A DNA stretch of 64,000 nt from IMG/VR virus record IMGVR_UViG_3300035698_010479, positions 164,459 through 228,458 of that record; one strand, given 5' to 3'. The stretch's first letter is position 1. Each line of letters opens with the position of its first letter. The notes beneath the pieces are model-generated. The model saw only the letters and a program-made list of their open reading frames with translations. It had not been told where the DNA came from and searched no databases. The position numbers and the translations under genes are program-made. Below, one piece after another: positions 1 to 46,484 of the stretch.

Positions 1-43
1 TTACCGTAAAATTGGACTTTCTTATATTAATATTTGTTGCCAT
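1..43 (-). CDS. 5' fragment of a gene running off the window (MATNINIRKSNFTV...)
   Basis: ATG at 43 directly after the stop of the 49..546 ORF, same strand, open to the window edge. Confidence 0.45.
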   Translation of the reverse strand, partial: MATNINIRKSNFTV

Positions 44-48
44 ATATA

Positions 49-546
49 TTATCCATATAAAATTGTGGGTATCCAATGAAAATCATATTCATAAGGGTCC
101 CCTTTAACGATCACTTCCGATGTTATATCAAAATCTACTTCGCCATTATTTAAGGTTACCACCATATCTGATAAGTCTATACCTGATGATGGGTGCTTCT
201 CTTCTATAACAAAACGTATATGTTCTGTTATAGGTACATTAATACCCACGGGGGAAAAATTTTTTAAAGTCGGTGGGTATCTATCTACATCAAAATCCTG
301 CCAATCTATTATGCTACACATATCAGCAATAGCTTTATTTATTTCAGGCTCTATAAAGTCTTCTGTAACTTTGTGTACAAATCTTGGTACTATCTTATTA
401 CCACTAGAGTCCAGAGATGCGGTTCCTATCTCTAGCAACCACACCATTTCACCCTCTTCATCCTTTAAAGCATATTTACGTAAGTTTAAATTAAACTTTA
501 CTGCTTTTCTAGGATTTAAAGTATGCTTTACAATTATATCAGACAT
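49..546 (-). CDS. hypothetical virion structural protein, tail-tip region
   Basis: 165 aa, tightly packed in the tail operon; the C-terminal half is beta-rich and Ig-like. Confidence 0.6.
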   Translation of the reverse strand: MSDIIVKHTLNPRKAVKFNLNLRKYALKDEEGEMVWLLEIGTASLDSSGNKIVPRFVHKVTEDFIEPEINKAIADMCSIIDWQDFDVDRYPPTLKNFSPVGINVPITEHIRFVIEEKHPSSGIDLSDMVVTLNNGEVDFDITSEVIVKGDPYEYDFHWIPTILYG

Positions 547-25300: not shown

Positions 25301-28300
25301 CTTGTATATTTTGTGCTAAGTCCATATCTAATGCAGCAAAGGCCTTTTTAGCATTATCAAATACGGCTTTATTTTTTATAGCCTCTGTTTCTGTAACTAA
25401 GCCTTTTTCTACATCAGTAAAGATATCCAGTATAAACTTATTACCTGATTCCCTTAAATTCTGAGACAGATCGTCTATATTTACACCAGTACTAATACTA
25501 ATTCTTTCTTTTGTTTTATCATCCTGCTGACCTAATATATCAGCGGATAACTCTCCCATGGACTTAGGCATAAATGCTACACCTAATCCAGCTTTCTTTT
25601 GTTCGTCACCAGCTAAAACTTTAACATTAGATGTTTTATTAGCTGCTAATATATCACCTAAAGTAGATGGACTTGTAGGTGTTGTAGATACACCTTTTGA
25701 GCCATATCTAGTAGTAAGTTTTCTACCAAAGTGATTTAAGAATAGTTCAGCTAATTTTGCAGATTGTACTTCAACAGATGCACCCCTATTAGTGGTAACT
25801 TCATTTTTAACATCTGATATAAAAGCTTTATCTGGACGGCGCTTATACTTCTCATCGCGACCCATTATGGACATTATATTTCCAGTTACCTCTTCTATAT
25901 CGGAGTCTTTGATTGGACCTTCATTTATGGCGGAGGCTGTTCCTGAAGAAGCTTTGGGTCTTACAAGCTTTCGTACTGCAGTAGTAGCTGCATCAGCCAA
26001 CTTACCAGAAACTAGTATTTGATCTTCAAAGGTACCGGCAGTGTGGCGTAATTCCGCTAGGACGTTATAACCAATACCTGATTTACCAAATCTACCTGAT
26101 TGAATTACTTTATCTTCAGATTCAGATCTTAGTTTAGGAAATTCTGAAGTAACTCCCTGTGCTTTACCGAATAAACCAGTATCAAACCCTTTTGCAGAGG
26201 ATATACCTGAGATATTCCGACCTGTTTGTTGATATTCTAACGAAAAAGGTGCTATCTCACGTAAGTTACCTGTGTACATAGGGACTGTTCTGCCAGACCT
26301 ATTCATAGAATCAGGGGTTGTTTCCAAACTACTTGCAGGGGATTCGGGTAAACCTAGACTAGTAAGTTGTTTTGTAGTACCTGTATTTAATAAAGACTGT
26401 CTATACGCTACATCAGGAGATACGTCTTTAATGCCCTCTAGTTTACTAGCCTCATAAAATAATTCATTAGTTCTTCTATTAAAATTAGTTATAAATGCTT
26501 TTTTAGATTCATTACTAGAATTAAATTTTTTCTCTTCTTTAGAAACATCTTCATTAAAATTAGTTTGCCCTTCAGGTGTTAATAACTTAGAGCCTTCAGC
26601 ACCAATAGAATGGGCCTTTGAGTAGTTAAACATAGCAGATACTGTATCACCTTGATGCATACCACGTCTTGGTGCGTTTTGTTCAACTATAGGCATCATA
26701 CCTGATAGAGATGATAACGTTTTTTCGAAGTCGCCTATAGCACCTGTAGATGTGGCTATATTACCCACAATTTTGTCTATATCTTGTGTTGTGGCTCTTC
26801 CTATAGCATCATATACATTTGAAAAATTTAGAGAGTCTAGAGACTTAATAACTTTCGTGGCTGATAACCCAAGTGCGTCCATACTAGTCATAAACTCATC
26901 TATAGACTTAGTAGATTTTAAAGAATCATCAACCCTTTTAGATAATGCAGAAAACTCATCTGTAGCATTTAATTCATTTGAGGTGCCTTTAGTTATTCTC
27001 TGCTTTTCTACACTAATAGGTATTAAAGCCTTCTTGTAAAAAGAAGCTGCATCTTCTTTTGTGGCTGCAGCGCCGTTTTTAGAAGCTACACCCTTAAGTA
27101 GCAGTCTAGAGGCGTCTTCAAAAGTGTTAGCGGTGTCTGGTACTACATCACGTGGATCGGTATTAACTACTACACTTCTAGCTGCTTTAGCTAAACTTAA
27201 TATTTCAGGAGTTATATTTTCTTTATATGCTTCTTGTTTATCTTTTGGAAGTTTATGTAATAAATTAGTAGCATTTTTTAAATAGCCTTCAAAGGCCCTT
27301 TCATGACCAGATTTATACTCAGCAAGCTGTAAAGTAGACCTCTGACTACCATGTTGTGTCTCCAGTACGGTGCTACCAGTATTAGTTAATTTAGCAGCTG
27401 GAATCGCAATAGTGCGTTTGACTTCAGATAAAGTTTTTTGTATATCTGAAAATCCTACGGTTTTAGTAAATATATCTTTAAGAGAATCGTTAGATGTTTT
27501 TCCGAAAGCCTTAGCTATGTCATCAACAGAAGTAGACCCAATATTAGGTACACTTAATTGCTCAATGATATCCTTACCTAAAGCTGTACGTACCTCTGGA
27601 TTAAGTCCTTGAACACCACTTTCTTTAACATTTGTTTTTAACCACCCTGCAATCTCAGTTTTTAGTGTACTAGGTGTTTGGCCTTTATCTCTTAGTAGAT
27701 TTGTGGCAATTTTATCTGAGTAGGTTTTTAAAAGTTCTTTAGGGGTACCTTCCTGTTTACCAGTTAAACTTCTCAGTTTCTTCATGTCCACAACATCCAT
27801 AGCCCATTCACGTCCTCTGAGGTTGAAGGCTTTATTATGTGAACTACCAGTACCTTCATTCTCCACTACTTTCCAATCAGTGAATTGACGCTTTCCTGGC
27901 TGTGGGCGTAATCCTTCAGAAACCTTAGTATATATAGTTTGCTGTAGTTTATCCAAAGACACTGATAGTTTGGACATGTTATCATAAACTTTAAGTTCAT
28001 ACTCGTTCTTAGTATTCTCTGGAGCAGCATATTTTATATTGGGTTGTATAAATTTTTCAGAATACTTTACGCTAACCGCTTTTTCGGCATTAGTTAGAGA
28101 GTAGTTACTTTTGGAGGCATCATTTTTAAACTTTTCTACTACAGAGGCTAAAGAACTTTGTCCTGTAGTATTTTTATCAATAGCTTGTATAAGTTTGGAG
28201 TTGTCTTGTTTAGTACCACCTTTACCTACGATTGCAACTATGTTATTAACTTCTTTAACCAAGTCGCCTATAGCAGTGGAATCTTGAATAGTAGTTACAC

Positions 28301-29732
28301 GACGATCACTTTTTACAAATTTACTTATATTATCATTAGAAAGTGATACTTGAAGGTCTGGTACTTTACCTAGCTTTGCAAAATCGTGTTCAATAGAAAG
28401 TACATCACTCTTCTTTGTCTTATCATTTGTTATAAAAGAAGATTCCTTTCTATCAAGAACGGAGTTCATAGAAACACGTGTACTCTCAAGTTCTGCTACT
28501 AGTTTTTCTAATCTACTTCTCTGAGCTTCAACACCAGTACGATTACTTTCTGGTAACTTAGAAGCCTCGGATCTGTCGGGTAAATTACTAAGTTCTTTAG
28601 TTTTGTTATATTGTTCCCGGCCTAAAGATCCCTTTACATAATCAAATCCACGTACTAATTTAGTTAGTTCTTCTTGAAGAGCCTTTATAGGTGTAGTAAT
28701 GATATCTAAAGATATTCCACTTTTATTTAGCTCGTTTATCTTACCTTGTAATTGTTCTAGTCTATTATATATACTTGGGATATCATCTCTAGCTATGTCA
28801 ATATTTAGCTTTATTACGTCTTGGTCAACAAGCTTATCTAATTTACTAGTAGCTTTTGTAGTATCCGCCTCTACAGTTATAGTAGTAGATTTATCTTTAA
28901 AAGTTTCTGTGATTGTCTTTTCTGCTTGGGCCGTATCAACAACAATATTCAGAGATATTTCTTGTTCAAGGCGATCACGAACCTGTTTTATGTTTGCATT
29001 TAAGCTCTTATCAATCATTGATAAGCTAGCAACAGCACCAATAGACTTATCATGGTCAATCTTAGCTAGTGGCGCTTTTATAGTTTTATAACTTTCTTTA
29101 GTATTAGATAACTTTGTAAGTAAACTTTCAAGCATAGTTATAAGTTTGCTTGAGTCAGGTGTTTCTTTATTACTCTCTGCTACAAACACCTTGGCCATAT
29201 TAGGTAGAACAGATAAATTCTTTGAAATAGCTGATAACTCTTGTACTACTTTAGTCATATCAGATATTTCTTTCTTAGATACAGTAGATGCGGCTGTTTT
29301 TACAGAACTGGTTACAGCCGTTTTTTCGTTGGAAACTTTATTAGCCTTAAAGAAGTTTTGAAGTTGTTCAGTAAGAATGGTTTTTACAGTAGCTGTTACC
29401 TCTTTCTGTATCTCTCTACTATTTACAGGAGTATCGCCTACAGAAGATTTATTGACTATATCTACAATAGCGTCTTTAACATCTCTGGCTAGAGACTTAG
29501 AAAAAGCTGAATTATCTTTAGATATACCTTTAGAATCTCCTGGCAAACTACTAGATATAGCTTTAGATATAGCCCCACTTAAAGTGCTTTCTAAAGTTTT
29601 CATAGAGGAGTTTATGGAACTTTCAATGGCGTTACTAATACCGGAAACATCAAAATCACTGTTAGTATTAGCGCCCTTGTTATTGTCAGAATATGATTGG
29701 ATCTTGATTATGTGCTCGCTTGTTCCAGCCAA
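7311..29732 (-). CDS. giant tail tape measure protein fused to a two-barrel (beta/beta-prime-like) RNA polymerase
   Basis: 7473 aa, TTG start with AGGAGG 8 nt upstream, sited between tail chaperones and tail-tip genes. TP901-type TMP core at aa ~3440-3760. RNAP motifs: FEDQILVS aa1235, GRKLTTRYGSKGV aa1336, GKKG aa2025, RFP aa2186, DYDGD aa2286. Confidence 0.92.
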   Translation of the reverse strand: MAGTSEHIIKIQSYSDNNKGANTNSDFDVSGISNAIESSINSSMKTLESTLSGAISKAISSSLPGDSKGISKDNSAFSKSLARDVKDAIVDIVNKSSVGDTPVNSREIQKEVTATVKTILTEQLQNFFKANKVSNEKTAVTSSVKTAASTVSKKEISDMTKVVQELSAISKNLSVLPNMAKVFVAESNKETPDSSKLITMLESLLTKLSNTKESYKTIKAPLAKIDHDKSIGAVASLSMIDKSLNANIKQVRDRLEQEISLNIVVDTAQAEKTITETFKDKSTTITVEADTTKATSKLDKLVDQDVIKLNIDIARDDIPSIYNRLEQLQGKINELNKSGISLDIITTPIKALQEELTKLVRGFDYVKGSLGREQYNKTKELSNLPDRSEASKLPESNRTGVEAQRSRLEKLVAELESTRVSMNSVLDRKESSFITNDKTKKSDVLSIEHDFAKLGKVPDLQVSLSNDNISKFVKSDRRVTTIQDSTAIGDLVKEVNNIVAIVGKGGTKQDNSKLIQAIDKNTTGQSSLASVVEKFKNDASKSNYSLTNAEKAVSVKYSEKFIQPNIKYAAPENTKNEYELKVYDNMSKLSVSLDKLQQTIYTKVSEGLRPQPGKRQFTDWKVVENEGTGSSHNKAFNLRGREWAMDVVDMKKLRSLTGKQEGTPKELLKTYSDKIATNLLRDKGQTPSTLKTEIAGWLKTNVKESGVQGLNPEVRTALGKDIIEQLSVPNIGSTSVDDIAKAFGKTSNDSLKDIFTKTVGFSDIQKTLSEVKRTIAIPAAKLTNTGSTVLETQHGSQRSTLQLAEYKSGHERAFEGYLKNATNLLHKLPKDKQEAYKENITPEILSLAKAARSVVVNTDPRDVVPDTANTFEDASRLLLKGVASKNGAAATKEDAASFYKKALIPISVEKQRITKGTSNELNATDEFSALSKRVDDSLKSTKSIDEFMTSMDALGLSATKVIKSLDSLNFSNVYDAIGRATTQDIDKIVGNIATSTGAIGDFEKTLSSLSGMMPIVEQNAPRRGMHQGDTVSAMFNYSKAHSIGAEGSKLLTPEGQTNFNEDVSKEEKKFNSSNESKKAFITNFNRRTNELFYEASKLEGIKDVSPDVAYRQSLLNTGTTKQLTSLGLPESPASSLETTPDSMNRSGRTVPMYTGNLREIAPFSLEYQQTGRNISGISSAKGFDTGLFGKAQGVTSEFPKLRSESEDKVIQSGRFGKSGIGYNVLAELRHTAGTFEDQILVSGKLADAATTAVRKLVRPKASSGTASAINEGPIKDSDIEEVTGNIMSIMGRDEKYKRRPDKAFISDVKNEVTTNRGASVEVQSAKLAELFLNHFGRKLTTRYGSKGVSTTPTSPSTLGDILAANKTSNVKVLAGDEQKKAGLGVAFMPKSMGELSADILGQQDDKTKERISISTGVNIDDLSQNLRESGNKFILDIFTDVEKGLVTETEAIKNKAVFDNAKKAFAALDMDLAQNIQGIDQIKNKHVGDKTVAKAIDVRISSYGAAKRGLQTEPLEMIANNLAGSEGNTVIKNTIDDKNTGLISGASGGSFSKYSKALGFSGSGKTDEELQSKITSMFSKEKLQDKSTQDAIKAMIELEKKSSYYVEVVDELNKRRKSLVGEKFLSIVEEPTQTEEWSKGAIDSLSKGIKLNIPAYAAYTSTFGEDSAFMKSLNENFTDKQAEHYDNILTYLVNTNDAYKTSVLASVKQIDIKDLKSVNKDATKTFNEGDPGSLLGTIFDTDKLPEAYKTVIPSTKGKDAPGEDLYIPRSISRTTYADPMQAGSYGIKKLGSKLQDVIDKSRSLESFYNKDSSMLLDTDITGMSGAFGSTTSNAMSSLFTKDFSKDSRGRSTGLENTDTAEAVTKVNAVKQDLLKLLNKLDDQGKLSTDEGSLNKSVQNFYNSKYNTGGRFDSAQGSESDFVKHLGTKEGFNSPTTLAAMKNMLIGTGMSGEADTSVLARATDSSTRLDVMSGISSALGDKDSMFSYGTGADKEEKYNNQVIKRQEGLERAKQSYQESLKRTLVGKKGSVARTFFTRNIPSVLAKATNATVDKTEDLMAFSETLRGIDGLDLTSEISKIDKLTAEHSDNVAKYKEIGMPVLKQHELGVSSKLAEKLRVNFTKKYDADKGFLLNGDKGNQVEGSLKDLLVYSDKLENTAKKVNGGDRAEDIKRYVNEELSPYIESVRFPFTGTSSLKPYKAKLVQTAGGIGDDSLMVPGTPEMDMGAFEEVYNSIKDKVKTLSIERESARDTGDDPKADELTNTIDRLNEAISAVLPKYVAHAQKLDYDGDQIELHTAKTSEARNDIYKHFKMLTEDIDSTAGKFGDFYSYDSKQPSQGDLPLSYMSQAFSKKFDSSKGYSFLDKPFTTEDLSYLNPKEKVGILASKEQDLNMTSGGESVSRVMRAIFDKAGAKFDDSSIKDIEDLGDASQAASLQLDTIKDINIKSLIEGHLKEELANMKLDTAVNAQLFKINTGTDTESMTKLMRAYESKRGFGEGEIALSDKTKSGKIDNDFVTRERNTQLNEFFRFTIQKGMDVKHAGERPIAGELVKGVTTGPSGLADLMQKLDKNKSYDDLKKFKNINEESLRNTFGKFSTQELKDQVAATGANIGNVSDMNRSDLTDTLVKNLGFDGFLRDLQSTIEQLAIKGIQAKSEKPMSAEVAYKILSKRYEPKDGNPPKGIDVSSMVTNINDPMYKFRTGGFQVDDTFDEQFKDGLDSVAKTFRSKGAYAELVKTFDSLGKEGVNQKDYSKASSLLYGTTSEQFALGKAPMGPIKELIGSMENTLGLAPISDRKQNSILTSPEHVAKLSDIPENAKSEEIDSISKYNDKLGDLEILRARMSRISEVSGYRKDPLPTAGRDISIGVTEDKDAIANASLGVFKTQESASVIPTITPQNQTGVEYNTNRGEEPPHPAFNTGVTGGNLPPSPPEGTKLAIPTTGGVIPVFIEGINASLVFPVKLLGQLIDSANLGNTGNSAYTTGAFKDDDSGIGNINQTVDKFKTTEEQRKSAAGRAQTLQPHEGTGPSVELSNLQLLRDASKSLYEARGMDFNNEAKKLTTEAQDYIEGAKDRGGIDVSEFLDFTKNARILNQQDPAQGMSGKDISTAWRLYKDAVVGYLMDKAEEAQIAYESVKGMGGNEEGKAYNRLESAVTAVQKKITDDTGKRSDIYTANKVWAFPDIAKAAGVYQAPVDIQRKSNRDLGDITDPDSDLLKKVFDDITGDLSGKNRGNITAPTDKARNAIKDLTEMNDESIALMSNGRLLERLGPEIAEAWNFEGAAERVTRLRSALELFKQFNVSDSPLSVESKNLETTIKLLKDAENKLSKVDMGRKTQPGGPGVWGDTGVVQVPKWADPEMQANLHKRNISKLREYYGKGNEEGGAKVGERYTYDAKVFDDSGKPIENQRVLFHKLSESVDTAGQTVGIFTAKQEDMAASLAGANRGFLGAIERAVKWGAASSLIYGGVDKLKEAVETVAEVEVGMARLKMVMPAKTTDFSGLQKSAVGMAKEYGTGTTGVIDAMVVYAQQGLSQSEVTDRTNTSMLAANVTTLKAKDATEALTAAMKVFRTEGDRSMRFLDSWSEVESKHAITAGDMAEAIKKSAAAASTAGITFDQLNGIVASIGSVTRQSGKEVGTSLRFIMRRLSSEKGPNELAKLNVPTITGAGELRGGFDILSGLAEKWKELNSAQKLTVAQAIGGTRQYNSLLVLMDNWQEALDGVQDSMNSQGSASRRNAELMQTYSKQVEQTKSASLELQLAFGKIAFPAAKFGLQGMRAMAETVSAIPASFKIASVAALGLFTYLSKGAKILDTISNFFSGGTPIVGNLIGSIKDELKTASFEIMGAGATDPSSRGLKTLVADQVEGRGQGKGIRDFESALGKAAYMLVSAGKSFNDTVGGGLQGTGKAGQGFGQSMVRGSSWLSAVVSSLGGGKYGKDEDVTYKDLAGGAASKYSKSEGVKGAFALGGMKGIGKVASSFLGVATEVAGLGGAAAGIFIDEFSKKLGAGGDIFKNWAKDNAGVIKSMAPMLLTLGLLTPAIKTLGAEFMKTTRSSKDFADSMYGAITKDETDLFSIRDTEKSTGDIKRKLKDVAKSEDPATADRQKYLGTYVNPLNALSSVQTDALKLGEKIARENTNMISGYDKLGNVILRTSDNYQTLLNTFERSKVRDLAAKDSSVAARHIEALTKTDGSETWKSELKDLTKEIPIIGELISNQISVAPAKSLEILTGKLNNLVAKKNASPMSTVYDDDIKNLQGKLAKIKDTFNVTYSEFKRSLSNIPTAGFGKDEVASIMGADELQAGYQLMIDVEPQFNVKGVKGKVTKEDVLGAEVMKRLFPESNNLGATKALSVANTETAGVSKREGKVLSGDLVTFTDDAAKGFNMAGQQAIVKLKETSDGIFEWVATYFNSKTLKIDERKFDNNMQDLVESILPTKVIEQDMSERIDALGTIITGASAGLVGLAKKGFKTDFNLGERFFSDISTSTIIQGDKGFNPTEGFGESPFQKGWADDFEKYYNKPLHEYKTSLEQLEKMHLDGLDTSSVEMSTGLYESLMKLQNILRNNQVVLQYRAVFADLTKTMEANTRAVKENIAVEKTRSPLSKETSGLLKGRDASLANVDLGKYNKADLSSQERLLIKSSKFEENSKKLKELEIRKSGKAEQMYTVERSKVALESIKNLSGGFGSTIGDKDFAKYTDIVAKTGDLGIAELKIDTSNTAENTAKTVDKLDEILNNLSDTAGSEAMQTSFMDALDFMLPSPNITKNERLSEALDRVASIRNEAASAGDVDKTTKANAALDNLTKQLVDRMGIVGATNKVNSGIFGSGDFKGEELIQRAFGGLDFKTLSSEMKANMPDEKSWFGLVTKKGTPTFDKTVEGVQSIQAENIAKSKESTILNSKNIAGAATGFGVYQAFNSNFSNKKIENYEKEIQDLKKRENEVGFIDYAPQMESLTTAKAAEEKKARMYGTMRYAAGGTSGGMLLARNLGMSEDNIKRIGAGGAALGVYGAAKLNQGMTGDDLPPLVKDFGKEVTIFAAAMKDDGIFSTLKQGKAASRFKDASEGFMKQFTEETLDLKVTPNKENDDRDAKYSAASKSFSNTKDNVVFDAEWKAKEFKRKVENPNADLRENTKESVNQGAQDLKDKLAELKEYVKTTSQDAIKSSADKMARGEEVNLKEEASKVYEGAKIKTGESYEDIKGKMSSAGEFTGKAADYAATASLGALDALVEALKNNTDAVNGSSESTPGNAAGGFIQKFSTGGTVKQIVPGTGDVQPSLLTAGEEVLTEEQRKKLKPVLDALKNGPPVMYADGGYVNDRLDKLKAFQATAETKGADIAASFGKKAGFNSEVTKMFLGDTLEKARYQATLLKGAVSDPLGYSKATGFGADTLDKLKAFQATAETKGADIAASFGKKAGFNSEVTKMFLGDAISNTKGTIGKYTAKAASKIGLKKIPGIGTVAAAGFAAERAAIGDYLGAGMEMASGLVSNIPGVGTAASFLIDGALMGKDFISSKAPNLEDIKNTKAGLQDKLSKMSKLKYSAIAAGSLGAYSLLNNEEESYASGGFISTGLKGLLKLTGTGVGLGIGAAASGLAEIGKILQNKNLVTGARKTTAAIKATATASPSAYEAFKKANPKMYEALATGTLGAAGGSLLYANLNEDEDIYDKYNDSLAGHAGGGTVGSGMIKGPGTGTSDSINMNDVPDGSFIVPSKYAQNAKEQIEFASGGSAKSDIRVSNGEYFISPEDASKIGETNLKKLQHGQKTSFANGGVVRGYTNGGEVSSLPASVVSLDQDSVNRFAQAAAAASAFTLSRYAAEKSADKTKATDLGNLAEGENTAIYDAILANSEAAQKVYDTTRNPMADGNNGAEVPTEEVSRIFDTAKEYNKALDDTAAIESSLISEHDKYNKEIATLKEEMRKADIAEKFLMQIEAMNKSIADANFAENFKNSLKLGTGAFEGFSGPKDLNIETKGVTDLNSMELYQLVQKRKEDQKGIYGPTDWAEDFKNFSLRVINSVNPEDSLNHKYRGQNVLKEYSALEDKKVGLTSRMNAGLQNRSQATDADELEKWDDFLKDIGKELENVTEKQDGYRVALHSVIKETDAAARTIENIKNKLATITSVRTDALYNVNNRGMGGRLRGATNDISLIPNSVDSISNTQYAHLQASAGMKDTMSQYKVNTNLYDGQLQKVKELEDTLNNLKLEDPQTSNNGYFGKGAQASIVSGDIVTKTLALAAAKKELEETGHALEVASMKMSNFMEATDAAKQFETAIVSVKTSMYAASMGASGLQSKLDSLYGGSSPFAPQQIDINQREDFARNGGGTLISGKSNQFDIEKAQYLKTMHGQSTSPQEWMQAKLGNANLPKKQEEYKQHEERLRSSQAIRDAIRPGQDYQAAIASSRIKIQERIADNNYTDFDTAGVSKNKESDRSAIVSLDNGYKKLNDLMNSLVDRGTPINEQDFNSMREVSSQTTESLGGASKDELKNALSSVSSNPVVSALNAQTDKIINTLLTSSQLVEALGVLKVDKSPTFMEELSKVGDILSRSFSDPTGLASGGTVGSIIRGAGTGTSDDISMAVPSGSYVIQAKYAQATKSRLNSFAKGGQVPINVSNGELLLTPEEVAKIGGTATADAFNSGRLPDDATIRSSWSKEDYNNHGFANEKDYSQQIGGLETPMIDPVDILSGFGSAALFKNVVSKATNVTTKSGLSGYLKEAQGIMGTNLDVSKYTKEIMNNKALLKEVMSKGQAIYGDSASLINIVTRTGPIGLKNMVDSIATKGFAKGGSVDEQEKLRKQLFDMYSKDAIVSYPSEPKQVYTTDVYKDNKGVWQNNTSLTPSNQNTSGVSLKERVAASLDNSTSSNNIINSEETTEQLINKISSLAKFRDSNSIDSRGLHLSLQDANLTHAVTPEEEEGKKQLTDEITKLGNISRGNTAYYENAMKEPTTKLIAKQIDATRAGASVNLPTKRWSDIKGLTVMNGTGKGTPFVADNLNKGPDALSELQKRVNLASADTPERKAYLSTLDDKGRESFFKSLSITDRNVKTLASAGGMAAVATNQKANFMMSEAFQHSSNFESFYLDKRKSDMAKLVDEKYGKGTFKKRSERNIDGLRTYNEQLNGFTTRAGNDPDFYKKYMQSMSGTIPEKMLIEIISRLTKQKQGEILTRGDNTKNNFLAGGDVNSNNLSRQVRHNGGVAHKSGSYFLEGGEVILDKNYFGNNTTQNNSASINTQAPAKQTVEIEGLDAFEKIVSNLEKSLNKLTNIKIEGIDKLTDIKIEGLSDLRDIKIEGLSDLKDIKIEGLSELKNIKIEGINDLHDIKITGIDSIRDIKVEGLEKLANIRIENIDQLKNISITGLENLRDIKILGLDELKDINVKTSSVGADMGDMFASTLKDFDSRVGNLEKSSADQISLIKTTVKDIVAELPVLDINQKSEIAGLKKDMLATSSEVSGLTSSIITLKQVLNVSINELKESQNNAMTHIYSIKRV
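7659..7988 (-). repeat. 10 tandem 33-bp (11-aa) units, consensus IKIEGL.DL.D, near the TMP C-terminus
   Basis: Read directly: IKIEGIDKLTD IKIEGLSDLRD IKIEGLSDLKD IKIEGLSELKN IKIEGINDLHD ... IKILGLDELKD. Confidence 0.9.
13473..13802. repeat. perfect 117-bp direct repeat (13473-13589 and 13686-13802), in frame inside the TMP
   Basis: Base-by-base identical; both copies encode DKLKAFQATAETKGADIAASFGKKAGFNSEVTKMFLGD; offset 213 bp. Confidence 0.92.
18500..19420 (-). other. tape-measure core domain (PhageMin_Tail/TP901-like); boundaries approximate
   Basis: GMAKEYG..TTGVIDAMVVYAQQG...SMLAANV...ATEALTAAM...LDSWSEV..KHAITAGDMAEAIKK.AAAA..AGITFDQLNG...SGKEVGTSLRFIMRRL is the typical TMP core pattern. 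Confidence 0.88.
22000..26400 (-). other. embedded RNA polymerase module (beta-like DPBB then beta-prime-like DPBB); boundaries approximate
   Basis: Collinear counterparts of RpoB and RpoC conserved blocks; catalytic DYDGD at 22863-22877. Confidence 0.88.
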
Positions 29733-29736
29733 TAGT

Positions 29737-30753
29737 TTACCCTCCTGAGGTTCTTTTCTTGATATCTGTTCTATCTTTTATTTTCTGAGCTTCTTTCGGT
29801 TTATCATACTTTATATCATAGTAAAGCTCATTTGACTGAGTAATAATTACTTCCTCGGAATCAAATGCAGATAATGAGCCTTTATTCTTATTTTTTTTAT
29901 TCTTGTCTCTCTGTATAGAAGATTCATTATTCATGTCTTTATAATAATCATCCATAAATTTATCTAAAGCTTCGTCATCCTCTATAACTGCATCGGGTGG
30001 TCTATCAGAAGACATCATGGAATAAATTTGCTCGTAATAATTTGACCAGTATATTAGATTTAACTGGTCTGTTGTATAGTCTACTAAAGGTACTCCAAAT
30101 AAAACTTCGGATGTCTTTAAACTAGATGTATATCTTATTCTCCATAAGTTACTTCTAGCTATAAATCTTATTGTAGCACTGTCTAAACCACGCATAAAAT
30201 CCATGAAAGCCGAAAAAATTTCGTTCTTATCATCGGTGTTTCTATCCATTAAAAAAGCATCGTAAGAGTACCAATACTTGGATTTATCCTCTGTGTAGAC
30301 ACATTCACTACATATAAAACCGTACATATCTTCTTCTGCCTTATTATCCGCAGACATATATAATTTAGAATATTTTTTTGCTAATATATTAGATAAATCC
30401 GCTTTTATTTCAGAAATAGTTTTTTTAATTCTATCTTGATTAGCTCTAACTTTTAAAGTTTTAGCTAGAAGGACTTCTTGACCCTCTAAGCGAGATCGTA
30501 GTTTGGCAACTGCGTTTTCATCATCCCTTGAAAAAATACCCCTAGAGATAATTAATTCCTCTAATGCTTTTTTAGGAAGGAGTCCATCACTAATGGCTTT
30601 TTTGTATGATTTATCCCAAAGCAGTTTAGATTTTATTTTTAAAAAATTATTAGGATATTGTAAATAAAGTAGTTCATTATTTATATATACTAAACATTTA
30701 CCTAAAGCTATTTTACGGATAAGTAAATCTGTGTCTTCATATGATATTTCCAT
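29737..30753 (-). CDS. tail assembly chaperone, long form (GT-like)
   Basis: 338 aa, helical, directly upstream of the TMP; its N-terminal part resembles the 30808 ORF. Confidence 0.65.
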   Translation of the reverse strand: MEISYEDTDLLIRKIALGKCLVYINNELLYLQYPNNFLKIKSKLLWDKSYKKAISDGLLPKKALEELIISRGIFSRDDENAVAKLRSRLEGQEVLLAKTLKVRANQDRIKKTISEIKADLSNILAKKYSKLYMSADNKAEEDMYGFICSECVYTEDKSKYWYSYDAFLMDRNTDDKNEIFSAFMDFMRGLDSATIRFIARSNLWRIRYTSSLKTSEVLFGVPLVDYTTDQLNLIYWSNYYEQIYSMMSSDRPPDAVIEDDEALDKFMDDYYKDMNNESSIQRDKNKKNKNKGSLSAFDSEEVIITQSNELYYDIKYDKPKEAQKIKDRTDIKKRTSGG

Positions 30754-30764
30754 AATAACTATAA

Positions 30765-30793
30765 TGTAGGTACTAAAATTATTAGTACCTACA
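30765..30793. terminator. 12-bp stem hairpin between the two chaperone genes
   Basis: TGTAGGTACTAA-aatta-TTAGTACCTACA; no strong U-tract. Confidence 0.45.
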
Positions 30794-30807
30794 GTAGTAT
30801 AGATTAA

Positions 30808-31566
30808 TTATTCAGATTTTTTACCCTTTTTTATAACTTTCTTAGTGTCATCTATAGGAAGATCTTCTAGCATAACATTTTCTTCGTTTGTATTCACGGA
30901 TGTATCCTCTTCATCAACAACAAGAGAAGCTAAGTCTTTTGCTATCTGAATTGATGCTTCTTCTTGTAACTCACGCATAGCAACTGCTTCTGGGGTGTTC
31001 TCTAAAAACTTACTATCTAGGCCTTGTAGGTATAGCATTGCCTCAAAACGGGATTGCTGCGCAAGTGATTGCTCTTTCTCTGTAAGATAATCCTCGAATT
31101 TTTCCCATAGACGATTGCCTTCCGAATCAATTATTAACCTAGAAGTAAGATATTCAAGTCTAGAGTCATCTGCCATCTGCTCACAAGTATTACCTAGAGG
31201 TGCTGAAAGACGCTGGTTCCATTGGAACAGTTCATCTCTAGCCATAGCTACACGGTAGGCAAGTTCAGATTTTTCTTCGGAATTTTTTGCATTTTGTAGA
31301 GCCTCTATTTTAGCTGCTAATTCTGCTGCTAACTCATTTGACCTTTTTTCAAACTCCGGTCCGATAATACCCCTGCGCATAAGAATATCAGTCATCTCTG
31401 CAGTAGTTGTTATACCGTTTACAAGGCTTTTGGTGTAGGATTTACTGTATTCCCAATCAGCTCCTCTAATATCTTCCGCTGTTGGTGGTACTATAAAATA
31501 TGTGGTATCTTTCTTTACATTTAAAAAACTTCTTAGTCCTTCAGTACTAAATGTTTTACTTTCCAT
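30808..31566 (-). CDS. tail assembly chaperone, short form (G-like)
   Basis: Start revised from 31608 to the ATG at 31566 (AAGGAG RBS); 252 aa, helical with an acidic C-terminus; lies between tail tube and TMP. Confidence 0.65.
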   Translation of the reverse strand: MESKTFSTEGLRSFLNVKKDTTYFIVPPTAEDIRGADWEYSKSYTKSLVNGITTTAEMTDILMRRGIIGPEFEKRSNELAAELAAKIEALQNAKNSEEKSELAYRVAMARDELFQWNQRLSAPLGNTCEQMADDSRLEYLTSRLIIDSEGNRLWEKFEDYLTEKEQSLAQQSRFEAMLYLQGLDSKFLENTPEAVAMRELQEEASIQIAKDLASLVVDEEDTSVNTNEENVMLEDLPIDDTKKVIKKGKKSE

Positions 31567-31576
31567 AACCGTCTCC

Positions 31577-31819
31577 TTACTTATTTTTAATTTCAATGAT
31601 ATCATCACTCATATCTAGGTGTTTTACATCATAACAGTCCAATTCAGATATAATAGTCCTTATACAATCGTTACCTATACGTAGTATCCTACCTCTAAGA
31701 ATTTTAAACGTATTGGTGTCCGAAACTGCAATAGATGTATAGTCTAAAACAGATTCAAATAATTTGGTCACTTCTTTTTTAATTAAAGCATCCAATTGTT
31801 TTTTATCAACCTCTCCCAT
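31577..31819 (-). CDS. hypothetical protein
   Basis: 80 aa, AGGAGG RBS. Confidence 0.65.
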   Translation of the reverse strand: MGEVDKKQLDALIKKEVTKLFESVLDYTSIAVSDTNTFKILRGRILRIGNDCIRTIISELDCYDVKHLDMSDDIIEIKNK

Positions 31820-31962: not shown

Positions 31963-33552
31963 TTAACCACGTCGTCTAATTTTCTTACCATCAGTAATAT
32001 TACCAATAGTTATATCACCTTTGACAACATACAAATCGTTAGTAGAACGGAAAGAGAAGGACTGAGTTGCATTCGCACCCATATCTAAAGTCATACCCTC
32101 ATCAGTAATTTTAAGATGCTCAACTACGATTGTTTTTAAAGCTTTTTCTGCGTTACCGGCAGAATAAGTTCCCATAGTACCGTCAACCCAGTAATGCTGA
32201 CCAACTAAGTCAGAAGTAGCTGCAACTAGACGGTTAGAACCAGTTCCACCAGCTTCCTCATCGGTTTGTGCATAAACTTTAACTACAAGTTTTAGATCCT
32301 CAGAAGACATAAGGTCAGCTAGGGCTATACTATCCAAAGTACCAGCTTTGAAAGCAGATAGTTTGTTAGCAACTTTGGCCCAGTTCTCCAAGTCACCTGC
32401 GGTAGACTCAACTGCTACTGTAATAGGAACAGGAAGTGTAAGTGGACGGTCATAAGGAGAAAGATGCCCTAACTCGGTTAAAGGCTCACGAGTAAGTGAC
32501 GCCGAGATGGATGCACTGGTTAAACGCCATGCAATGTCGAAACTTGCAGATGTATCAGAAACAATATGAACTTCAATCTGTCCCTGACGTAAAGCACCTA
32601 CAAAGTCTGGGCGGTTTAAACTATCCATAAGTGCAAAATATTTATTGTTTGTACCAGAACCATAAGCATCTGCAGAGTATATAACAACCAATCGGTCAGT
32701 AGCTACAATTGCAGTGCCTGTAGGGAAATACAAACGATGTTGTGTTCCGTTATCATGATAAATGAAAGTAGCTACAGCCGCAGTTGTACCAACTGCAACT
32801 TTAATGTTTACCATGGTATTCGTGGATGCGTCATACCAAGTTACAGCAGGTGCGCCATTAGGGTCTTTTCGTAGAAAACCAATACCACCAGTAAGAACAG
32901 CAATGTTAGCAGCTGCACCTAAAGTAAGATCTACATAACCACTGGTTACATCTCCAGCAGCAATAGTGAAGTTATCACAGTTTACGAAGCGACCATCATT
33001 CAACAACCACATTTTGTTATCTGTCTCAAGGCCATAATTCTCAGTGGCGTTAGCACCAGATGAGTAACTAAACTCCAAACTATTTGCATAAACTTTGTCC
33101 AAAAACAATGTTTGGTCAATGTTTGAAGCTAAAGAACCCGCAGAACACTCCTCTTGAACTGGTGCCCATAAAGTAACACCTGGTAGAGCTCCACAAGATA
33201 TAGCAAAGTCAGGTACACAAGCGCCGTGTAGATAAACACCGGTAGATGCTAAAGAAGCATTAACAACTTCTAGGTTTGAGTTTGTACTAGTAGCAGTTGC
33301 ATCCATAGCTCTTCGTTCTGGAAGAATCTGAGCAATCTGTGCCATAGTTGTAACGTCACCAAAGTCATTGGTGTTTAATGTTACAGCTACTGCAGGTACG
33401 TCATCAACAACGTCAATGATGTCGAGGTGACCTAATTCGAAAATATCTTCACTAGTGAAGGTAGTTGTACTACCAAAAGACTGCACTCTATATAACAAAC
33501 TGCCATTACACCATACTGACTGTGAGGCATATATTATTCGGTTACGAGCCAT
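31963..33552 (-). CDS. major tail tube protein with two tandem tube domains
   Basis: 529 aa, upstream of the chaperones and TMP, own terminator; duplicated ELGH (aa39, aa360) and GANAT (aa166, aa492) motifs. Confidence 0.78.
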   Translation of the reverse strand: MARNRIIYASQSVWCNGSLLYRVQSFGSTTTFTSEDIFELGHLDIIDVVDDVPAVAVTLNTNDFGDVTTMAQIAQILPERRAMDATATSTNSNLEVVNASLASTGVYLHGACVPDFAISCGALPGVTLWAPVQEECSAGSLASNIDQTLFLDKVYANSLEFSYSSGANATENYGLETDNKMWLLNDGRFVNCDNFTIAAGDVTSGYVDLTLGAAANIAVLTGGIGFLRKDPNGAPAVTWYDASTNTMVNIKVAVGTTAAVATFIYHDNGTQHRLYFPTGTAIVATDRLVVIYSADAYGSGTNNKYFALMDSLNRPDFVGALRQGQIEVHIVSDTSASFDIAWRLTSASISASLTREPLTELGHLSPYDRPLTLPVPITVAVESTAGDLENWAKVANKLSAFKAGTLDSIALADLMSSEDLKLVVKVYAQTDEEAGGTGSNRLVAATSDLVGQHYWVDGTMGTYSAGNAEKALKTIVVEHLKITDEGMTLDMGANATQSFSFRSTNDLYVVKGDITIGNITDGKKIRRRG

Positions 33553-33714
33553 AGTTTTTCTCCTTATAAAAAAGTTATATGCTTATTCAATTAATTGTTT
33601 TTAAACACCGTTAGTTACTGTAGCAATACGGTGAAATTCACTTTATAGGTTAGTTTAGTTTTATTCCTTTTCCTTACCACTATACTACAGGTTAGTTAAT
33701 TACTTACATTAATA

Positions 33715-34575
33715 TTAGCAATATGAAACTAAATTAAAGCTTATTTTAGACCTATAAGCATTTAAGTCAGATAAAGTTGCCGACTCATTACGACTACTTA
33801 ATGTTAAGGGTAAATTTATATTTCTAGCTTCAACATCCTCAAATCTTAGATTTGATGTACCGCTTACAACTGTTCTATCAAATAAGTTAGTTGCCTTATC
33901 GTTACTATTTTTACTATTGTAAAATGTGCCATCAAAATCCAAAACAGACCCTCTTGGAAAATCATATATTGGACAGGTTTTTAAATATAAACTATCATAT
34001 ATCAATTCTGTTATATCAGCTCTTTCAGCGGATGATGATGCAAAAACAAATATATTACTCTTCCTAATTACCTTCTTACCTCCACCTAACTGAAATCCAG
34101 TTTTCTGTGTAGCAGCTATATCAATAACTACAACTGGTGCGGATGATGCGGATAATGAGCTCCACTCATCCACTAAACTTATATACTGCCAGTAAAAATC
34201 AATGTATTTAGGTTTTAAATAACTTGGTATAATTATCTTACCATCTATATAATCTACTCTATATAAATTACCACTTATCGTAGTTAATGAGTCATCATAT
34301 ATAGTAACTCTATTGGATTGTTCAGGTGTACCAGAAAAAGTTGTAGAACATATTAAAGATTCAGTAGATAAGTCATCAAAATATGCAATGCCTCTACCGT
34401 ATTCGAATGGAGATGGCTCAGCTGTTGTTATTATATCATAGACACTTAAAGAGTTATCTGACTTAACTCTGTTTAACACCAGTTCATCTTTATCTTGGTA
34501 CTCTATAAAATCAACTAGTACTAGGTCTCTTAGGTATCTATATACACTAAGATCTTCTTTTCGTATCTTATACAT
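33715..34575 (-). CDS. putative tail terminator/completion protein
   Basis: 286 aa, immediately before the tail tube gene; VVVIDI...FQLGG...NIFVFA...ERADITELIY pattern. Confidence 0.55.
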   Translation of the reverse strand: MYKIRKEDLSVYRYLRDLVLVDFIEYQDKDELVLNRVKSDNSLSVYDIITTAEPSPFEYGRGIAYFDDLSTESLICSTTFSGTPEQSNRVTIYDDSLTTISGNLYRVDYIDGKIIIPSYLKPKYIDFYWQYISLVDEWSSLSASSAPVVVIDIAATQKTGFQLGGGKKVIRKSNIFVFASSSAERADITELIYDSLYLKTCPIYDFPRGSVLDFDGTFYNSKNSNDKATNLFDRTVVSGTSNLRFEDVEARNINLPLTLSSRNESATLSDLNAYRSKISFNLVSYC

Positions 34576-37929: not shown

Positions 37930-39003
37930 TTATATTTGTGAACGGTCAATGACTCCTAGTCCCAACATACGACTATCAAGGCACGCAAAACCGAGCTCTG
38001 CCCATCCAAAAAATCCTTGTTTTTGAACACGTAGAAGAGTTGGGTCCTCATGTGCTTCGTACTCTTTTCTAACAGGCATAACTAAAGAGTCATTAGAAGT
38101 CATATCGAAACCATAAATCTGAGTCTCACCTAATGTGGTTACTGTACCATCGGCATCAGTAATGTTAGCATTATCCAAAGTATAAGAATTATATTTACCA
38201 GCACCGTCAGCAAGGAATTTGCCATACTGTGAAGTATTACCATTAATATTGTACAATCCAGGAGCACCTAAATGTTGTACTTCATGAAGAGCTACGTTCC
38301 AGATACTTCCCATACCAGCAGCTGTAAATACTTCTCTACGGGTAATAGGATCGATATCAGTATCAGTCCACTCACGAATATCTGCAGCGTCTTCTGGAGA
38401 TACATATAGGTCAGTAAGGGTTCTACCTAAACGTTTGAAGCCAACCAACATTTTATTTACCAATTCTTTAGAAAGATATCCGGCACCAGTAGCAGCGGTA
38501 GGAATCTCATAAATTGGAGCTGGTCTAGCACCTAAAAGACCTTTACCAGAAAAACCGGAAGTAGCAGCTGGTACGATTACTCTCCAACCACATTCTTCCT
38601 CATAATTAGCCAAGTCTTTTGCAACTCTAGCAGCGGTTCTTTGAACAACATCAATACGTGAGTCACGTGCATAGGTAATCTTCCAGTCTGCGGAAGCATT
38701 AATACTGAAAGTAGGTACATAAACCTCTTCACCGATACCCTCGATGAAGTTCTGGGCCTGATAACCTAAACCAGGAAGAACCCATACTGGGATTTCAAAA
38801 TCTTCGGCAACTGGGTATACTGCTTGTGCACCTGGTGCCAATCTTTCAACTGCAAACAACTGACGCATAATGGACTCTAGCTCTACTTTCTGTAAAATAG
38901 GTGTAGTGATAGCAGCTGCGAAAGCCCTATAAGCTGCCATACCTTCTGGAGTCTGAACTTCAGCGGTAGCAGCAAACAATTTTCTCATTTCATTAATATC
39001 CAT
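37930..39003 (-). CDS. major capsid protein (HK97 fold)
   Basis: 357 aa after protease/scaffold/decoration genes; strong RBS and terminator; E-loop-like YVPTFSINAS..WKITYARDSRIDVVQR..ARVAKDLANYEE. Confidence 0.85.
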   Translation of the reverse strand: MDINEMRKLFAATAEVQTPEGMAAYRAFAAAITTPILQKVELESIMRQLFAVERLAPGAQAVYPVAEDFEIPVWVLPGLGYQAQNFIEGIGEEVYVPTFSINASADWKITYARDSRIDVVQRTAARVAKDLANYEEECGWRVIVPAATSGFSGKGLLGARPAPIYEIPTAATGAGYLSKELVNKMLVGFKRLGRTLTDLYVSPEDAADIREWTDTDIDPITRREVFTAAGMGSIWNVALHEVQHLGAPGLYNINGNTSQYGKFLADGAGKYNSYTLDNANITDADGTVTTLGETQIYGFDMTSNDSLVMPVRKEYEAHEDPTLLRVQKQGFFGWAELGFACLDSRMLGLGVIDRSQI

Positions 39004-46400: not shown

Positions 46401-46484
46401 TATACAGGGGTTATTTCTATAAAACTCTATTAGGTCTGGACCTTGTTGTAATACAATATCCATATTTTTGGTTAGCTTAGACAT
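43470..46484 (-). CDS. terL: terminase large subunit containing an intein
   Basis: Walker A ATRGFGK|T split by the intein; GSRFYCVIVDEF Walker B; GIDP and MDRGGGG nuclease motifs; KDIYSAL C-terminal Asp; 568 aa after splicing. Confidence 0.93.
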   Translation of the reverse strand: MSKLTKNMDIVLQQGPDLIEFYRNNPCIAAYELLGVDLAPVQRIVFEAMWFKPYTLSVATRGFGKSVYLREITTYFNKGIVYLNEVLPEIPEYLSDGEDEVIDYNTKMFTSEGFRNTKKLCLEKGIQGKKLITQNGIIKRGSDHHPLLTIDYEGNFVYKTLAEFSVGDKVCIQRGQKVFGVNKVPIDDAYLLGLLIGDGYIGKKISGAFITSEDEDLISFTAAFCTLNNINYNITYKSGSCTCDVIFYAKGINKFINTYKVPITLAYDKTVPYSIRTSKRESQIAFLQGYFDTDGTVHNTNGGVSCCSVSRQLLEEIQMMLLNLGIIARLREKKTKSDFGKAYLLDMFSEDAYKFKELIGFRLKRKQTILNNYFSSKVLNPNKDTVPYVLHVCKAITTYYQTTYRTSKKPSFNIETNNKKELTYVKLHEFLEQCTSIEDKGFSLEQVSHFITNLKEILRYNYYFDTVVSIEDWKGDCYDFEMDMESEVEPNYMTNGFINHNTFLSGTLSALLALLYPGYRVGLIGPSFRQSKMIFAEIEKLYTSAPILKAATEKRPIRGSDTCYLKFRAVNGHNGAFIEALPLGADGGKIRGSRFYCVIVDEFAQVPSKIIETVLAPMSITKLDPMKKVRELERRTALIEAGLAFEDDFEEDSINKMIGTSSGYYKFNHMYKRMREYWNQIEEGSKDHAVFQIPYTALPDGFLDPKNIENAERVMSSHEFAMEYLGAMVSDSEGFFKASILEKCSTMDYVIELSGDKGSSYIIGIDPNQGGKAKCGVVIIKLGKPNKIVRVLALDGRTTQDITMSLQELCSSYNVLRIFMDRGGGGKSVADLLAEGYNGAEPILNRNDKDTLTLKGNRILELITFSTSWIADANFAALSLFEDGHLQFPIVPVDIVSDLILDEYDLINELKKQCLNIVVTQTSGGSLHFDTPKKGQNKDIYSALILASYGVKALDHEIVDETSKTSMHSSGGLVRNRNTSNWSAATGINSVSSSLSMAVLTRKK
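44982..46289 (-). mobile_element. intein with LAGLIDADG homing endonuclease (436 aa, aa66-501 of TerL)
   Basis: Starts SVYL, ends NGFINHN followed by Thr; LAGLIDADG-like LLGLLIGDGY and FLQGYFDTDG. Confidence 0.92.

What the first reader, a model, noticed from the sequence alone, without database searches (positions are those of the whole stretch)
31963..33552. Tail tube protein is an internal tandem duplication of two tube domains
Seen: ELGHL at aa39 and aa360 and GANAT at aa166 and aa492, with near-identical spacing (127 vs 132 aa), similar flanks (RVQSFGSTTTF vs RLTSASISASL) and a ~140-aa beta-rich insert between them. Established: T5 pb6 and Thermus P74-26 tube proteins have two tube domains per chain and form trimeric, pseudo-hexameric rings. 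Inference: trimeric rings, occurring here together with an ultra-long TMP and a TMP-fused RNAP as in the Thermus phages, which points to a recurring architecture.
Basis: partly seen in the sequence, partly recalled or inferred. Interest (0 to 1): 0.65.

Follow-up and report, generated by a model that had tools for sequence, protein, structure and literature searches.

The report
Two-domain tail tube protein, jumbo phage
This 529-residue phage protein is a tail tube protein made of two copies of the tube domain joined through an extra outward-facing domain; this design is known from phages T5 and P74-26, where three chains form each six-domain ring, and here it sits next to a 7,473-residue tail-length ruler that carries an RNA polymerase module.

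Summary
ELGHL (aa 39, 360) and GANAT (aa 166, 492) mark a collinear internal repeat. Smith-Waterman of the N against the C part gives z = 10.8, with 0 of 2000 shuffles as good. Family profiles give HHalign E = 3e-16 over 140 columns.

An AlphaFold2 model (pLDDT 78, pTM 0.81) shows two tail-tube beta-sandwich domains (aa 1-188 and 326-529) with a beta-sandwich insert between them. Its best structural matches are the known two-domain tube proteins, each aligned across both halves:

The gene lies in the tube-protein slot, between head-tail joining genes and a 7,473-aa tape measure protein (TMP). That TMP contains an invariant KLD[FY]DGD motif in a region that folds like the RNA polymerase largest subunit, so the parallel with the Thermus phages holds.

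Trimeric rings are inferred, not shown. The family has more than 800 close relatives but no Pfam, PHROG or PDB sequence match. Unlike pb6 and P74-26, its two halves are still recognisably alike in sequence. I class it as a new member of a known kind, of moderate interest.

The parts
31963..33552 (-). Whole gene for the 529-aa two-domain tail tube protein (P0001). AAGGAG ribosome-binding site at 33560..33565, after a 162-nt intergenic gap.
   Evidence: fold matches
32989..33552 (-). N-terminal tube domain, aa 1-188 (beta-sandwich, one helix, long loop).
   Evidence: AF2 model. Two-domain tube proteins align from model residues 3-8 onward. HHalign repeat unit aa 16-183.
33394..33465 (-). Long loop 1, aa 30-53, low-confidence in the monomer model. 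Contains ELGHL (aa 39-43, nt 33424..33438).
   Evidence: pLDDT below 50 for aa 30-53. E39 and G41 are invariant in 61 close relatives. Corresponds by position to P74-26 Loop1 (Q43-T65), needed for tube assembly.
33043..33057 (-). GANAT turn of the N domain, aa 166-170, between long strands 147-164 and 170-177.
32578..32988 (-). Inserted beta-sandwich (Ig-like) domain plus linker, aa 189-325. Variable in length and sequence across the family.
31966..32577 (-). C-terminal tube domain, aa 326-529.
32461..32475 (-). ELGHL of the C domain, aa 360-364, in long loop 2.
   Evidence: pLDDT below 50 for aa 358-364. E360, G362, H363 and L364 invariant.
32065..32079 (-). GANAT turn of the C domain, aa 492-496, between long strands 473-489 and 495-504.
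33715..34575 (-). Upstream 286-aa gene, a possible tail terminator or neck protein (lead only).
   Evidence: The nearest named Atlas clusters are Gp37, Phage_tail_terminator and SP10_terminator at scores 0.80-0.88, below the 0.9 mark.
29737..31819 (-). Three small genes between tube protein and TMP: 80 aa; 266 aa as listed (more likely 252 aa from the ATG at 31566, which has an AAGGAG site); and 338 aa. This is the slot of tail assembly chaperones. Function not shown.
   Evidence: The same order (tube, about 86, about 263, about 341 aa, TMP) is seen in relatives L009 and L006. No family hits.
7311..29732 (-). 7,473-aa tape measure protein. TMP core at aa 3410-3800 (nt 18333..19505). RNA polymerase-like region folded at aa 1976-2656 (nt 21765..23807), with DYDGD at aa 2286-2290 (nt 22863..22877).
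   Evidence: PF10145 E 5e-25 and phrog_4211 E 2e-80. Motif, invariant in 46 relatives. AF2 plus fold search.

Best explanation
The gene encodes the major tail tube protein of a 228-kb long-tailed (sipho-type) jumbo phage.

One chain holds two homologous tail-tube beta-sandwich domains (aa 1-188 and 326-529). They arose by tandem duplication of a single tube domain. A variable Ig-like beta-sandwich domain (aa 189-300) and a linker are inserted between them.

By analogy with T5 pb6 and P74-26 gp93, three chains would sit head to tail to make a ring of six tube domains (C3, pseudo-six-fold). Rings would stack around the giant tape measure protein. The long loop of each domain, which carries the conserved E-L-G motif, would reach into the neighbouring ring. 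The long hairpin ending in G-x-N-A-T-E/Q is, by analogy with other tube proteins, proposed to lie in the lumen-facing sheet, and the inserted domain is proposed to project outward as decoration.

Shown: the internal repeat, the two tube folds, their P74-26-like side-by-side arrangement in the model, and the gene's position.

Inferred: trimer stoichiometry, the roles of the loops, and the outward position of the insert.
For: Repeat:
- Smith-Waterman z = 10.8, 0 of 2000 shuffles.
- Family profile HHalign E = 3.3e-16 over 140 columns; the middle part is negative as a control.

Fold:
- AF2 model pLDDT 78, pTM 0.81.
- The top Foldseek PDB hits are the P74-26 tail tube (E 4.7e-6), DT57C/T5 tube, T5 tip proteins and the SH-Ab15497 major tail protein.
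- No sheath or capsid fold appears among the 50 best rows of either PDB fold search.

Context:
- On the minus strand the order is terminase with intein, portal, major head protein (phrog_2522), small neck-region genes, this gene, three small genes, then the 7,473-aa TMP.
- The same order with very long TMPs is found in relatives: 5,817 aa in L009, 3,935 aa in L003 and at least 2,198 aa in L006.
- An HMM of the family finds no second copy in the 228-kb genome.

Conservation:
- More than 846 relatives were found, and the best 120 are 63-88% identical.
- 356 cluster representatives were found, nearly all with both halves.
- In a tree of 59 N and 59 C domains, the C domains form one pure clade (support 0.99). 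This indicates a single duplication before the sampled family diverged.

The literature establishes duplication/fusion and trimeric pseudo-hexameric rings for pb6 and P74-26, and that the long loop is required for tube assembly in P74-26.
Against: - No oligomer was modelled or observed. The only complex job gave no verdict.
- The structure is a prediction. Whole-chain TM-scores to the PDB hits are low (0.3-0.5) because of the insert and the loops.
- No virion proteomics is available.
Confidence: 0.85

Rival explanations
1. It is a minor, single-ring pseudo-hexameric adaptor at the tail tip or tube end, like T5 p140 or the HFTV1 BTC protein. The true major tube protein would be another gene that has not been recognised.
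Confidence: 0.08
2. It forms six-chain rings. Only one tube domain would build the wall, and the second tube-like domain and the insert would sit outside as decoration or an outer layer.
For: Ring stoichiometry was not tested successfully. Tube proteins often carry outer decoration domains (pb6 Ig-like domain).
Against: Both domains superpose at once on the P74-26 and pb6 chains (290 and 289 aligned residues, rmsd 3.7 and 4.2 A). The model therefore has the side-by-side arrangement seen in trimeric rings. Both halves keep the same conserved loop and hairpin motifs across the family, as expected if both make equivalent ring contacts.
Confidence: 0.05
3. It is a tail sheath or a capsid protein, and the repeat is incidental.
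For: Its size (529 aa) and high conservation would suit a sheath or a capsid protein. It has no family annotation.
Against: No sheath or HK97 match appears among the 50 best rows of either PDB fold search. The major head protein is a different gene at 37930..39003 (phrog_2522, E 7e-11). No separate small tube gene follows, as a contractile tail would need.
Confidence: 0.02

Closest known systems
Thermus phage P74-26 tail tube protein gp93 (PDB 8ed0)
   Different: No sequence similarity was detected. gp93 is 348 aa and has no inserted domain. Its two halves show no detectable sequence similarity (Smith-Waterman z = -0.1; the paper gives 16% identity), whereas here z = 10.8. The host of P74-26 is a thermophile with an 83-kb phage genome; this genome is 228 kb with 34% GC.
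Phage T5 pb6 major tail tube protein (PDB 5ngj) and DT57C homologue
   Different: The Ig-like domain of pb6 is C-terminal (aa 375-462); here the extra domain sits between the two tube domains. The T5 TMP has only 1,219 aa. No sequence similarity was found, and the pb6 halves are not alike in sequence (z = -0.6).
T5 p140 and HFTV1 BTC (two-domain tube-like tail-tip proteins)
   Same: Two tube domains per chain, forming trimeric pseudo-hexamers.
Single-domain tube proteins (SPP1 gp17.1, lambda gpV, PVC/AFP tubes, T6SS Hcp)
   Different: They have one domain per chain and six chains per ring.

Membership tests
Two-domain (fused) siphophage tail tube proteins, pb6 / P74-26 gp93 type | Two tail-tube beta-sandwich domains in one polypeptide | tested here: met
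   AF2 model. Fold matches span both halves. Internal repeat E 3.3e-16.
Two-domain (fused) siphophage tail tube proteins, pb6 / P74-26 gp93 type | The two domains lie side by side as in the trimeric ring subunit | tested here: met
   A single superposition aligns 290 of 348 residues of 8ed0_A (rmsd 3.7 A) and 289 residues of 5ngj_A. This rests on a predicted model only.
Two-domain (fused) siphophage tail tube proteins, pb6 / P74-26 gp93 type | Assembles into C3 (pseudo-six-fold) rings stacked into a tube | not testable with these tools
   Three full chains exceed the size limit of the complex tool. The reduced job (full chain plus N domain) gave no verdict.
Two-domain (fused) siphophage tail tube proteins, pb6 / P74-26 gp93 type | A long loop in each domain, disordered in the monomer, for inter-ring contacts | tested here: met
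   Low-confidence loops at aa 30-53 and 358-364 carry the conserved ELG motif. Compare P74-26 Loop1 and Loop2. Their role in contacts is inferred.
Two-domain (fused) siphophage tail tube proteins, pb6 / P74-26 gp93 type | Gene lies between head-tail joining genes and the chaperone and TMP genes | tested here: met
   Gene order in the window and in relatives.
Two-domain (fused) siphophage tail tube proteins, pb6 / P74-26 gp93 type | Sequence homology to pb6 or gp93, or to a curated tube family (Pfam, PHROG) | tested here: not met
   No Pfam or PHROG hit for the protein, and no tube-family Pfam hit for any of the 61 relatives scanned. No PDB hit by sequence or by profile. HHalign against gp93, pb6 and p140 is negative. 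It therefore belongs by fold and architecture only, as a separate sequence family.
Tail sheath proteins | Sheath fold, followed by a separate small tube gene | tested here: not met
   No sheath among the 50 best rows of either PDB fold search. No tube-sized gene with a tube signature follows.
Ig-like decoration domains of tail tube proteins (Big_2 type) | Ig-like beta-sandwich recognisable by family profile or by a clear fold match | tested here: inconclusive
TMP-fused virion RNA polymerase (P23-45 gp96 type), for the neighbouring giant gene | DxDGD metal motif in a double-psi beta-barrel of RNA polymerase largest-subunit type, within a TMP chain | tested here: met

The most novel reading that the evidence does not exclude
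The duplication in this family may be a separate and younger event than those behind T5 pb6 and P74-26 gp93. Its two halves are still alike in sequence, whereas no sequence similarity to those proteins remains.

If so, a whole 'very long tail' package has either evolved more than once or been kept since a deep common ancestor. The package is a fused tube protein, a 5,000-8,000-aa TMP with an embedded virion RNA polymerase, and a separate single-chain two-barrel RNA polymerase. It would be present in a widespread group of jumbo phages from varied environmental metagenomes.

Scaled from P23-45 (800 nm for 5,002 aa), these tails would be about 1.1-1.2 um, longer than any tail measured so far.
Probability: 0.35. 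Interest if true: 0.7.

Novelty: new member of a known kind. Interest (0 to 1): 0.5.

Why it matters
Fused, pseudo-hexameric tube proteins have been characterised structurally in only a few phages. This family adds hundreds of uncultured relatives that no curated family covers.

It is also the case examined here in which the ancestral duplication is still visible in sequence. The family alignment therefore shows directly which positions both halves must keep: the E-L-G loop and the G-x-N-A-T turn. That gives concrete targets for mutational tests of tube assembly.

The fused tube protein recurs with TMPs of 2,200 to 8,000 aa. In the close relatives it recurs with a TMP-embedded RNA polymerase. 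This makes testable the idea, inferred here rather than taken from the P74-26 study, that halving the number of tube subunits helps build very long tails. It also suggests that the Thermus-phage infection strategy is not a thermophile oddity.

Tried and rejected
Searches that came back blank:
- Pfam and PHROG scans of the protein and six neighbours.
- PDB sequence search with the single sequence and with the family profile.
- tblastn against 50,697 GenBank phage records.

Analyses that were weak, failed or had to be replaced:
- HHalign on the shallow alignment A1 (Neff 1.6) found only a 23-column match at P 0.002. The diverse alignment A2 resolved it.
- Complex prediction with the full chain plus the N domain (aa 1-195) scored 0.27 against a mark of 0.34. 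This is no verdict and counts neither for nor against binding. Three or even two full chains exceed the 1000-residue limit.
- The IQ-TREE run through treekit returned no answer. It was replaced by MAFFT plus FastTree. P0138 and P0162 were left out of that tree because their N parts aligned poorly.

Comparisons with the Thermus and T5 proteins:
- BLAST or tblastn of the TMP, tube protein, head, portal, terminase and neck proteins against the P74-26 structural region found nothing.
- HHalign of the N and C profiles against gp93, pb6 and p140 found nothing. Common ancestry with those proteins therefore cannot be shown by sequence.

Other points:
- PDB sequence search with the RNA polymerase-like region was blank; the fold search was needed.
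- A programmed frameshift between the 80-aa and 266-aa genes was considered and dropped. The second gene has its own ATG at 31566 with an AAGGAG site just after the first gene's stop.
- The sheath and capsid readings were rejected.

Full report
**1. The observation**

The ORF at window 31963..33552 (minus strand) encodes 529 aa. It has an AAGGAG site seven bases before the ATG and follows a 162-nt intergenic gap.

ELGHL occurs at aa 39 and 360 and GANAT at aa 166 and 492. The spacings are 127 and 132 aa, and the quoted flanks are at aa 22 and 343. These are the only repeated 5-mers in the protein. Shuffled sequences give two or more repeated 5-mers 2% of the time.

The motifs belong to one collinear alignment:
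- BLASTP of aa 1-200 against aa 301-529 aligns 171 columns at 20% identity, 38.5 bits.
- The Smith-Waterman score is 91 against 33 +/- 5.4 for shuffles, so z = 10.8, with 0 of 2000 shuffles reaching it.
- The middle segment resembles neither end (z 0.6 and 0.1).

**2. The family, and the repeat at family level**

The word search found at least 846 relatives. The best 120 are 63-88% identical and nearly all about 530 aa. All are unnamed, and some sit on contigs of up to 325 kb.

The exhaustive profile search found 356 cluster representatives with E <= 0.001. Complete distant members are mostly 395-640 aa and match in several stretches. An alignment of 61 of them (A2, 20-64% identity to the query) shows both halves in all the rows displayed except P0138, whose N part aligned poorly, with a middle part that varies in length and sequence.

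The family consensus repeats the same signature in each half: R-V-Q ... E-D-x-x-E-L-G and G-x-A-T-E-N-Y in the N half, and L-R-x-Q-S ... R-E-x-L-x-E-L-G and G-x-N-A-T-Q-x-F in the C half.

HHalign of the N-half profile against the C-half profile gives probability 98.7%, E = 3.3e-16 and 140 columns. Both controls against the middle part give E of about 0.5. A shallow alignment of close relatives had given only a weak signal.

In a FastTree tree of 59 N and 59 C domains, all C domains form one pure clade (support 0.99, branch length 0.80). So one duplication preceded the divergence of the sampled family.

**3. What the protein is**

Neither Pfam, PHROGs, the PDB sequences nor the GenBank phage collection matches the protein, and Pfam and PDB-profile searches with its relatives found no tube family or solved structure either.

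AlphaFold2 on 61 sequences gives pLDDT 78 and pTM 0.81. The model has three parts:
- a beta-rich N domain (to about aa 188);
- a seven- or eight-strand beta domain (aa 189-294) followed by a low-confidence linker;
- a beta-rich C domain (aa 326-529).

Both ELGHL motifs fall in low-confidence loops (aa 30-53 and 358-364). Both GANAT motifs are the turns of long hairpins (strands 147-164/170-177 and 473-489/495-504).

Foldseek against the PDB ranks these first: P74-26 tail tube (E 4.7e-6), DT57C and T5 tubes, T5 tip proteins and the SH-Ab15497 major tail protein.

The Foldseek-independent search of 48,161 chains gives the following:

|---|---|---|---|---|
| P74-26 tail tube | 8ed0_A | 17.2 | 290 of 348 (rmsd 3.7 A) | 7..512 |
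| T5 pb6 | 5ngj_A | 15.1 | 289 | 3..526 |
| SH-Ab15497 major tail protein | 8xan_B | 14.8 | 270 | 8..513 |
| T5 tail tip | 7qg9_I | 13.1 | 255 | 7..513 |
| HFTV1 tail | 9fkb_BA | 8.8 | 219 | 11..507 |

BFVD gives 53 viral matches at E <= 0.001. Many are proteins of 300-410 aa that align across the whole model, several of them annotated as major tail proteins (Gordonia phage Kampe, Caulobacter phage Sansa, marine and archaeal viruses). These look like further two-domain tube proteins, though I did not check their domain make-up, so the fused design is probably not rare.

**4. Context**

The window is the last 64 kb of a single 228,458-bp contig with 33.9% GC. On the minus strand the gene order is:
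- large terminase interrupted by a LAGLIDADG intein (43470..46484);
- portal candidate (595 aa);
- major head protein (37930..39003, phrog_2522);
- several small genes;
- a 286-aa gene whose nearest named Atlas clusters are tail terminators (scores 0.80-0.88, a lead only);
- the tube gene;
- three small genes (80, 266 and 338 aa);
- the 7,473-aa ORF 7311..29732, with PF10145 (E 5e-25) and phrog_4211 (E 2e-80) at aa 3410-3800.

An HMM of the family finds no second copy in the genome.

Relatives keep the same order:

| Locus | Tube protein | Genes between | TMP |
|---|---|---|---|
| L009 | 538 aa | 86, 263, 341 aa | 5,817 aa |
| L006 | 530 aa | 88, 233, 324 aa | at least 2,198 aa (contig end) |
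| L003 | 414 aa | 423, 116, 217 aa | 3,935 aa |

All three informative relative loci, like the window itself, pair the fused tube protein with an unusually long TMP.

**5. The 'TMP-fused RNA polymerase' part of the inference**

The N-terminal part of the P23-45 TMP is an active virion RNA polymerase with DFDGD at aa 779, conserved in P74-26 (PMC10770324). I found that motif in P74-26 gp95.

In the window's giant ORF a single DYDGD lies at aa 2286. Forty-six relatives of 5,023-7,998 aa, all with PF10145, share aa 1850-2750 at 26-80% identity. Each has exactly one KLD[FY]DGD.

So a beta'-type catalytic module sits inside the TMP's 3,400-aa N-terminal extension. Its activity, and a beta-like second barrel, were not tested.

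The TMPs next to the distant tube relatives (L003, L006) have short N-terminal extensions and no DxDGD in the part seen. The RNA polymerase fusion therefore marks the subgroup close to the window, while the long TMP is more general.

**6. Relation to pb6 and gp93**

There is no sequence-level link:
- HHalign of the N and C profiles against gp93 (whole and by domain), pb6 and p140 gives E 0.02-0.8.
- The other structural proteins find nothing in the P74-26 structural region.

The two halves of gp93, pb6 and p140 are not alike in sequence (Smith-Waterman z -0.1, -0.6 and -1.1). The P74-26 paper gives 16% identity and calls the event ancient.

Here the halves are plainly alike. The simplest reading is that this duplication is younger than the split from those lineages, which would make it independent. 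Unequal rates, or gene conversion between the halves, could give the same picture. The shared package (fused tube, giant TMP with polymerase, second polymerase) points the other way, towards old common ancestry. I leave this open, at roughly even odds.

**7. How it most likely works**

- Shown: two homologous tube domains in one chain, arranged as in gp93 and pb6, encoded in the tube slot next to the TMP.
- Inferred from those systems: three chains close a ring head to tail, and rings stack around the TMP.
- Inferred: the long loops, which carry the invariant E-L-G and are disordered in the monomer model, insert into sockets of the next ring. In P74-26, deleting Loop1 abolishes assembly.
- Inferred: the insert faces outward.

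At 0.15-0.16 nm per TMP residue, 7,473 aa would give about 1.1-1.2 um if the whole chain sets the length. The 0.15 figure is the lambda rule from my own knowledge; 0.16 comes from 800 nm for 5,002 aa in P23-45 (abstract). If only the part from the TMP core onward counts, the length would be about 0.6 um. At about 4 nm per ring (general knowledge), that is 150-300 rings, or 450-900 chains.

**8. Verdict**

Trimer stoichiometry remains inferred, because the complex test gave no verdict.

The protein is a new sequence family of a known structural kind. Three things set it apart: the repeat is still visible in sequence, the extra domain sits between the tube domains, and it is tied to giant TMPs that carry a polymerase in a jumbo phage.

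Noticed in passing
window 7311..29732 (-), especially 21765..23807: The 7,473-aa TMP has a 3,400-aa N-terminal extension. A region at aa 1976-2656 folds like the RNA polymerase largest subunit, with an invariant KLD[FY]DGD motif (DYDGD at aa 2286). Forty-six relatives of 5,023-7,998 aa share it. If the whole chain sets tail length, the tail would exceed 1 um.
   Followed up: partly
genome contig C1:23334..26591 (+), outside the window; locus L008:335-3592: A 1,085-aa ORF with GLDFDGD. It has weak, correctly ordered Pfam hits to RNA_pol_Rpb2_6 (aa 301-464, 18 bits against a 23.4 cut-off) and RNA_pol_Rpb1_2 (aa 723-829, 24.1 bits against 25.3). All 14 weak PDB hits are RNA polymerase largest subunits. 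It is a candidate single-chain two-barrel non-virion RNA polymerase, paralleling P23-45 gp64.
   Followed up: partly
window 43470..46484 (-): The large terminase (Terminase_6N and 6C) is interrupted by an intein with a LAGLIDADG homing endonuclease (PF14528 E 3.5e-23; intein splicing domain).
   Followed up: no
genome contig C1:82246..82322 (complement), outside the window: One of the genome's 15 tRNA genes has the anticodon CTA, which reads TAG (ARAGORN labels it tRNA-Pyl). It is a possible amber suppressor. All ORFs used here read cleanly under table 11, and no other code was applied.
   Followed up: no
window 57126..58427 (-): A 433-aa protein with an N-terminal PIN domain fused to a PhoH-like ATPase (PF13638 E 3e-13, PF02562 E 2e-18).
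   Followed up: no
window 31566..31608 (-): The 266-aa ORF listed from a GTG at 31608 more likely starts at the ATG at 31566. That ATG follows an AAGGAG site placed just after the stop of the 80-aa gene, so the apparent overlap needs no frameshift.
   Followed up: yes
alignment A2 members (relatives, not the window): Two distant family members carry a CBM_X2 carbohydrate-binding domain (best E 1.7e-6), and some have long extra insertions in the N domain. This suggests that surface decorations on this tube protein are swapped freely.
   Followed up: no
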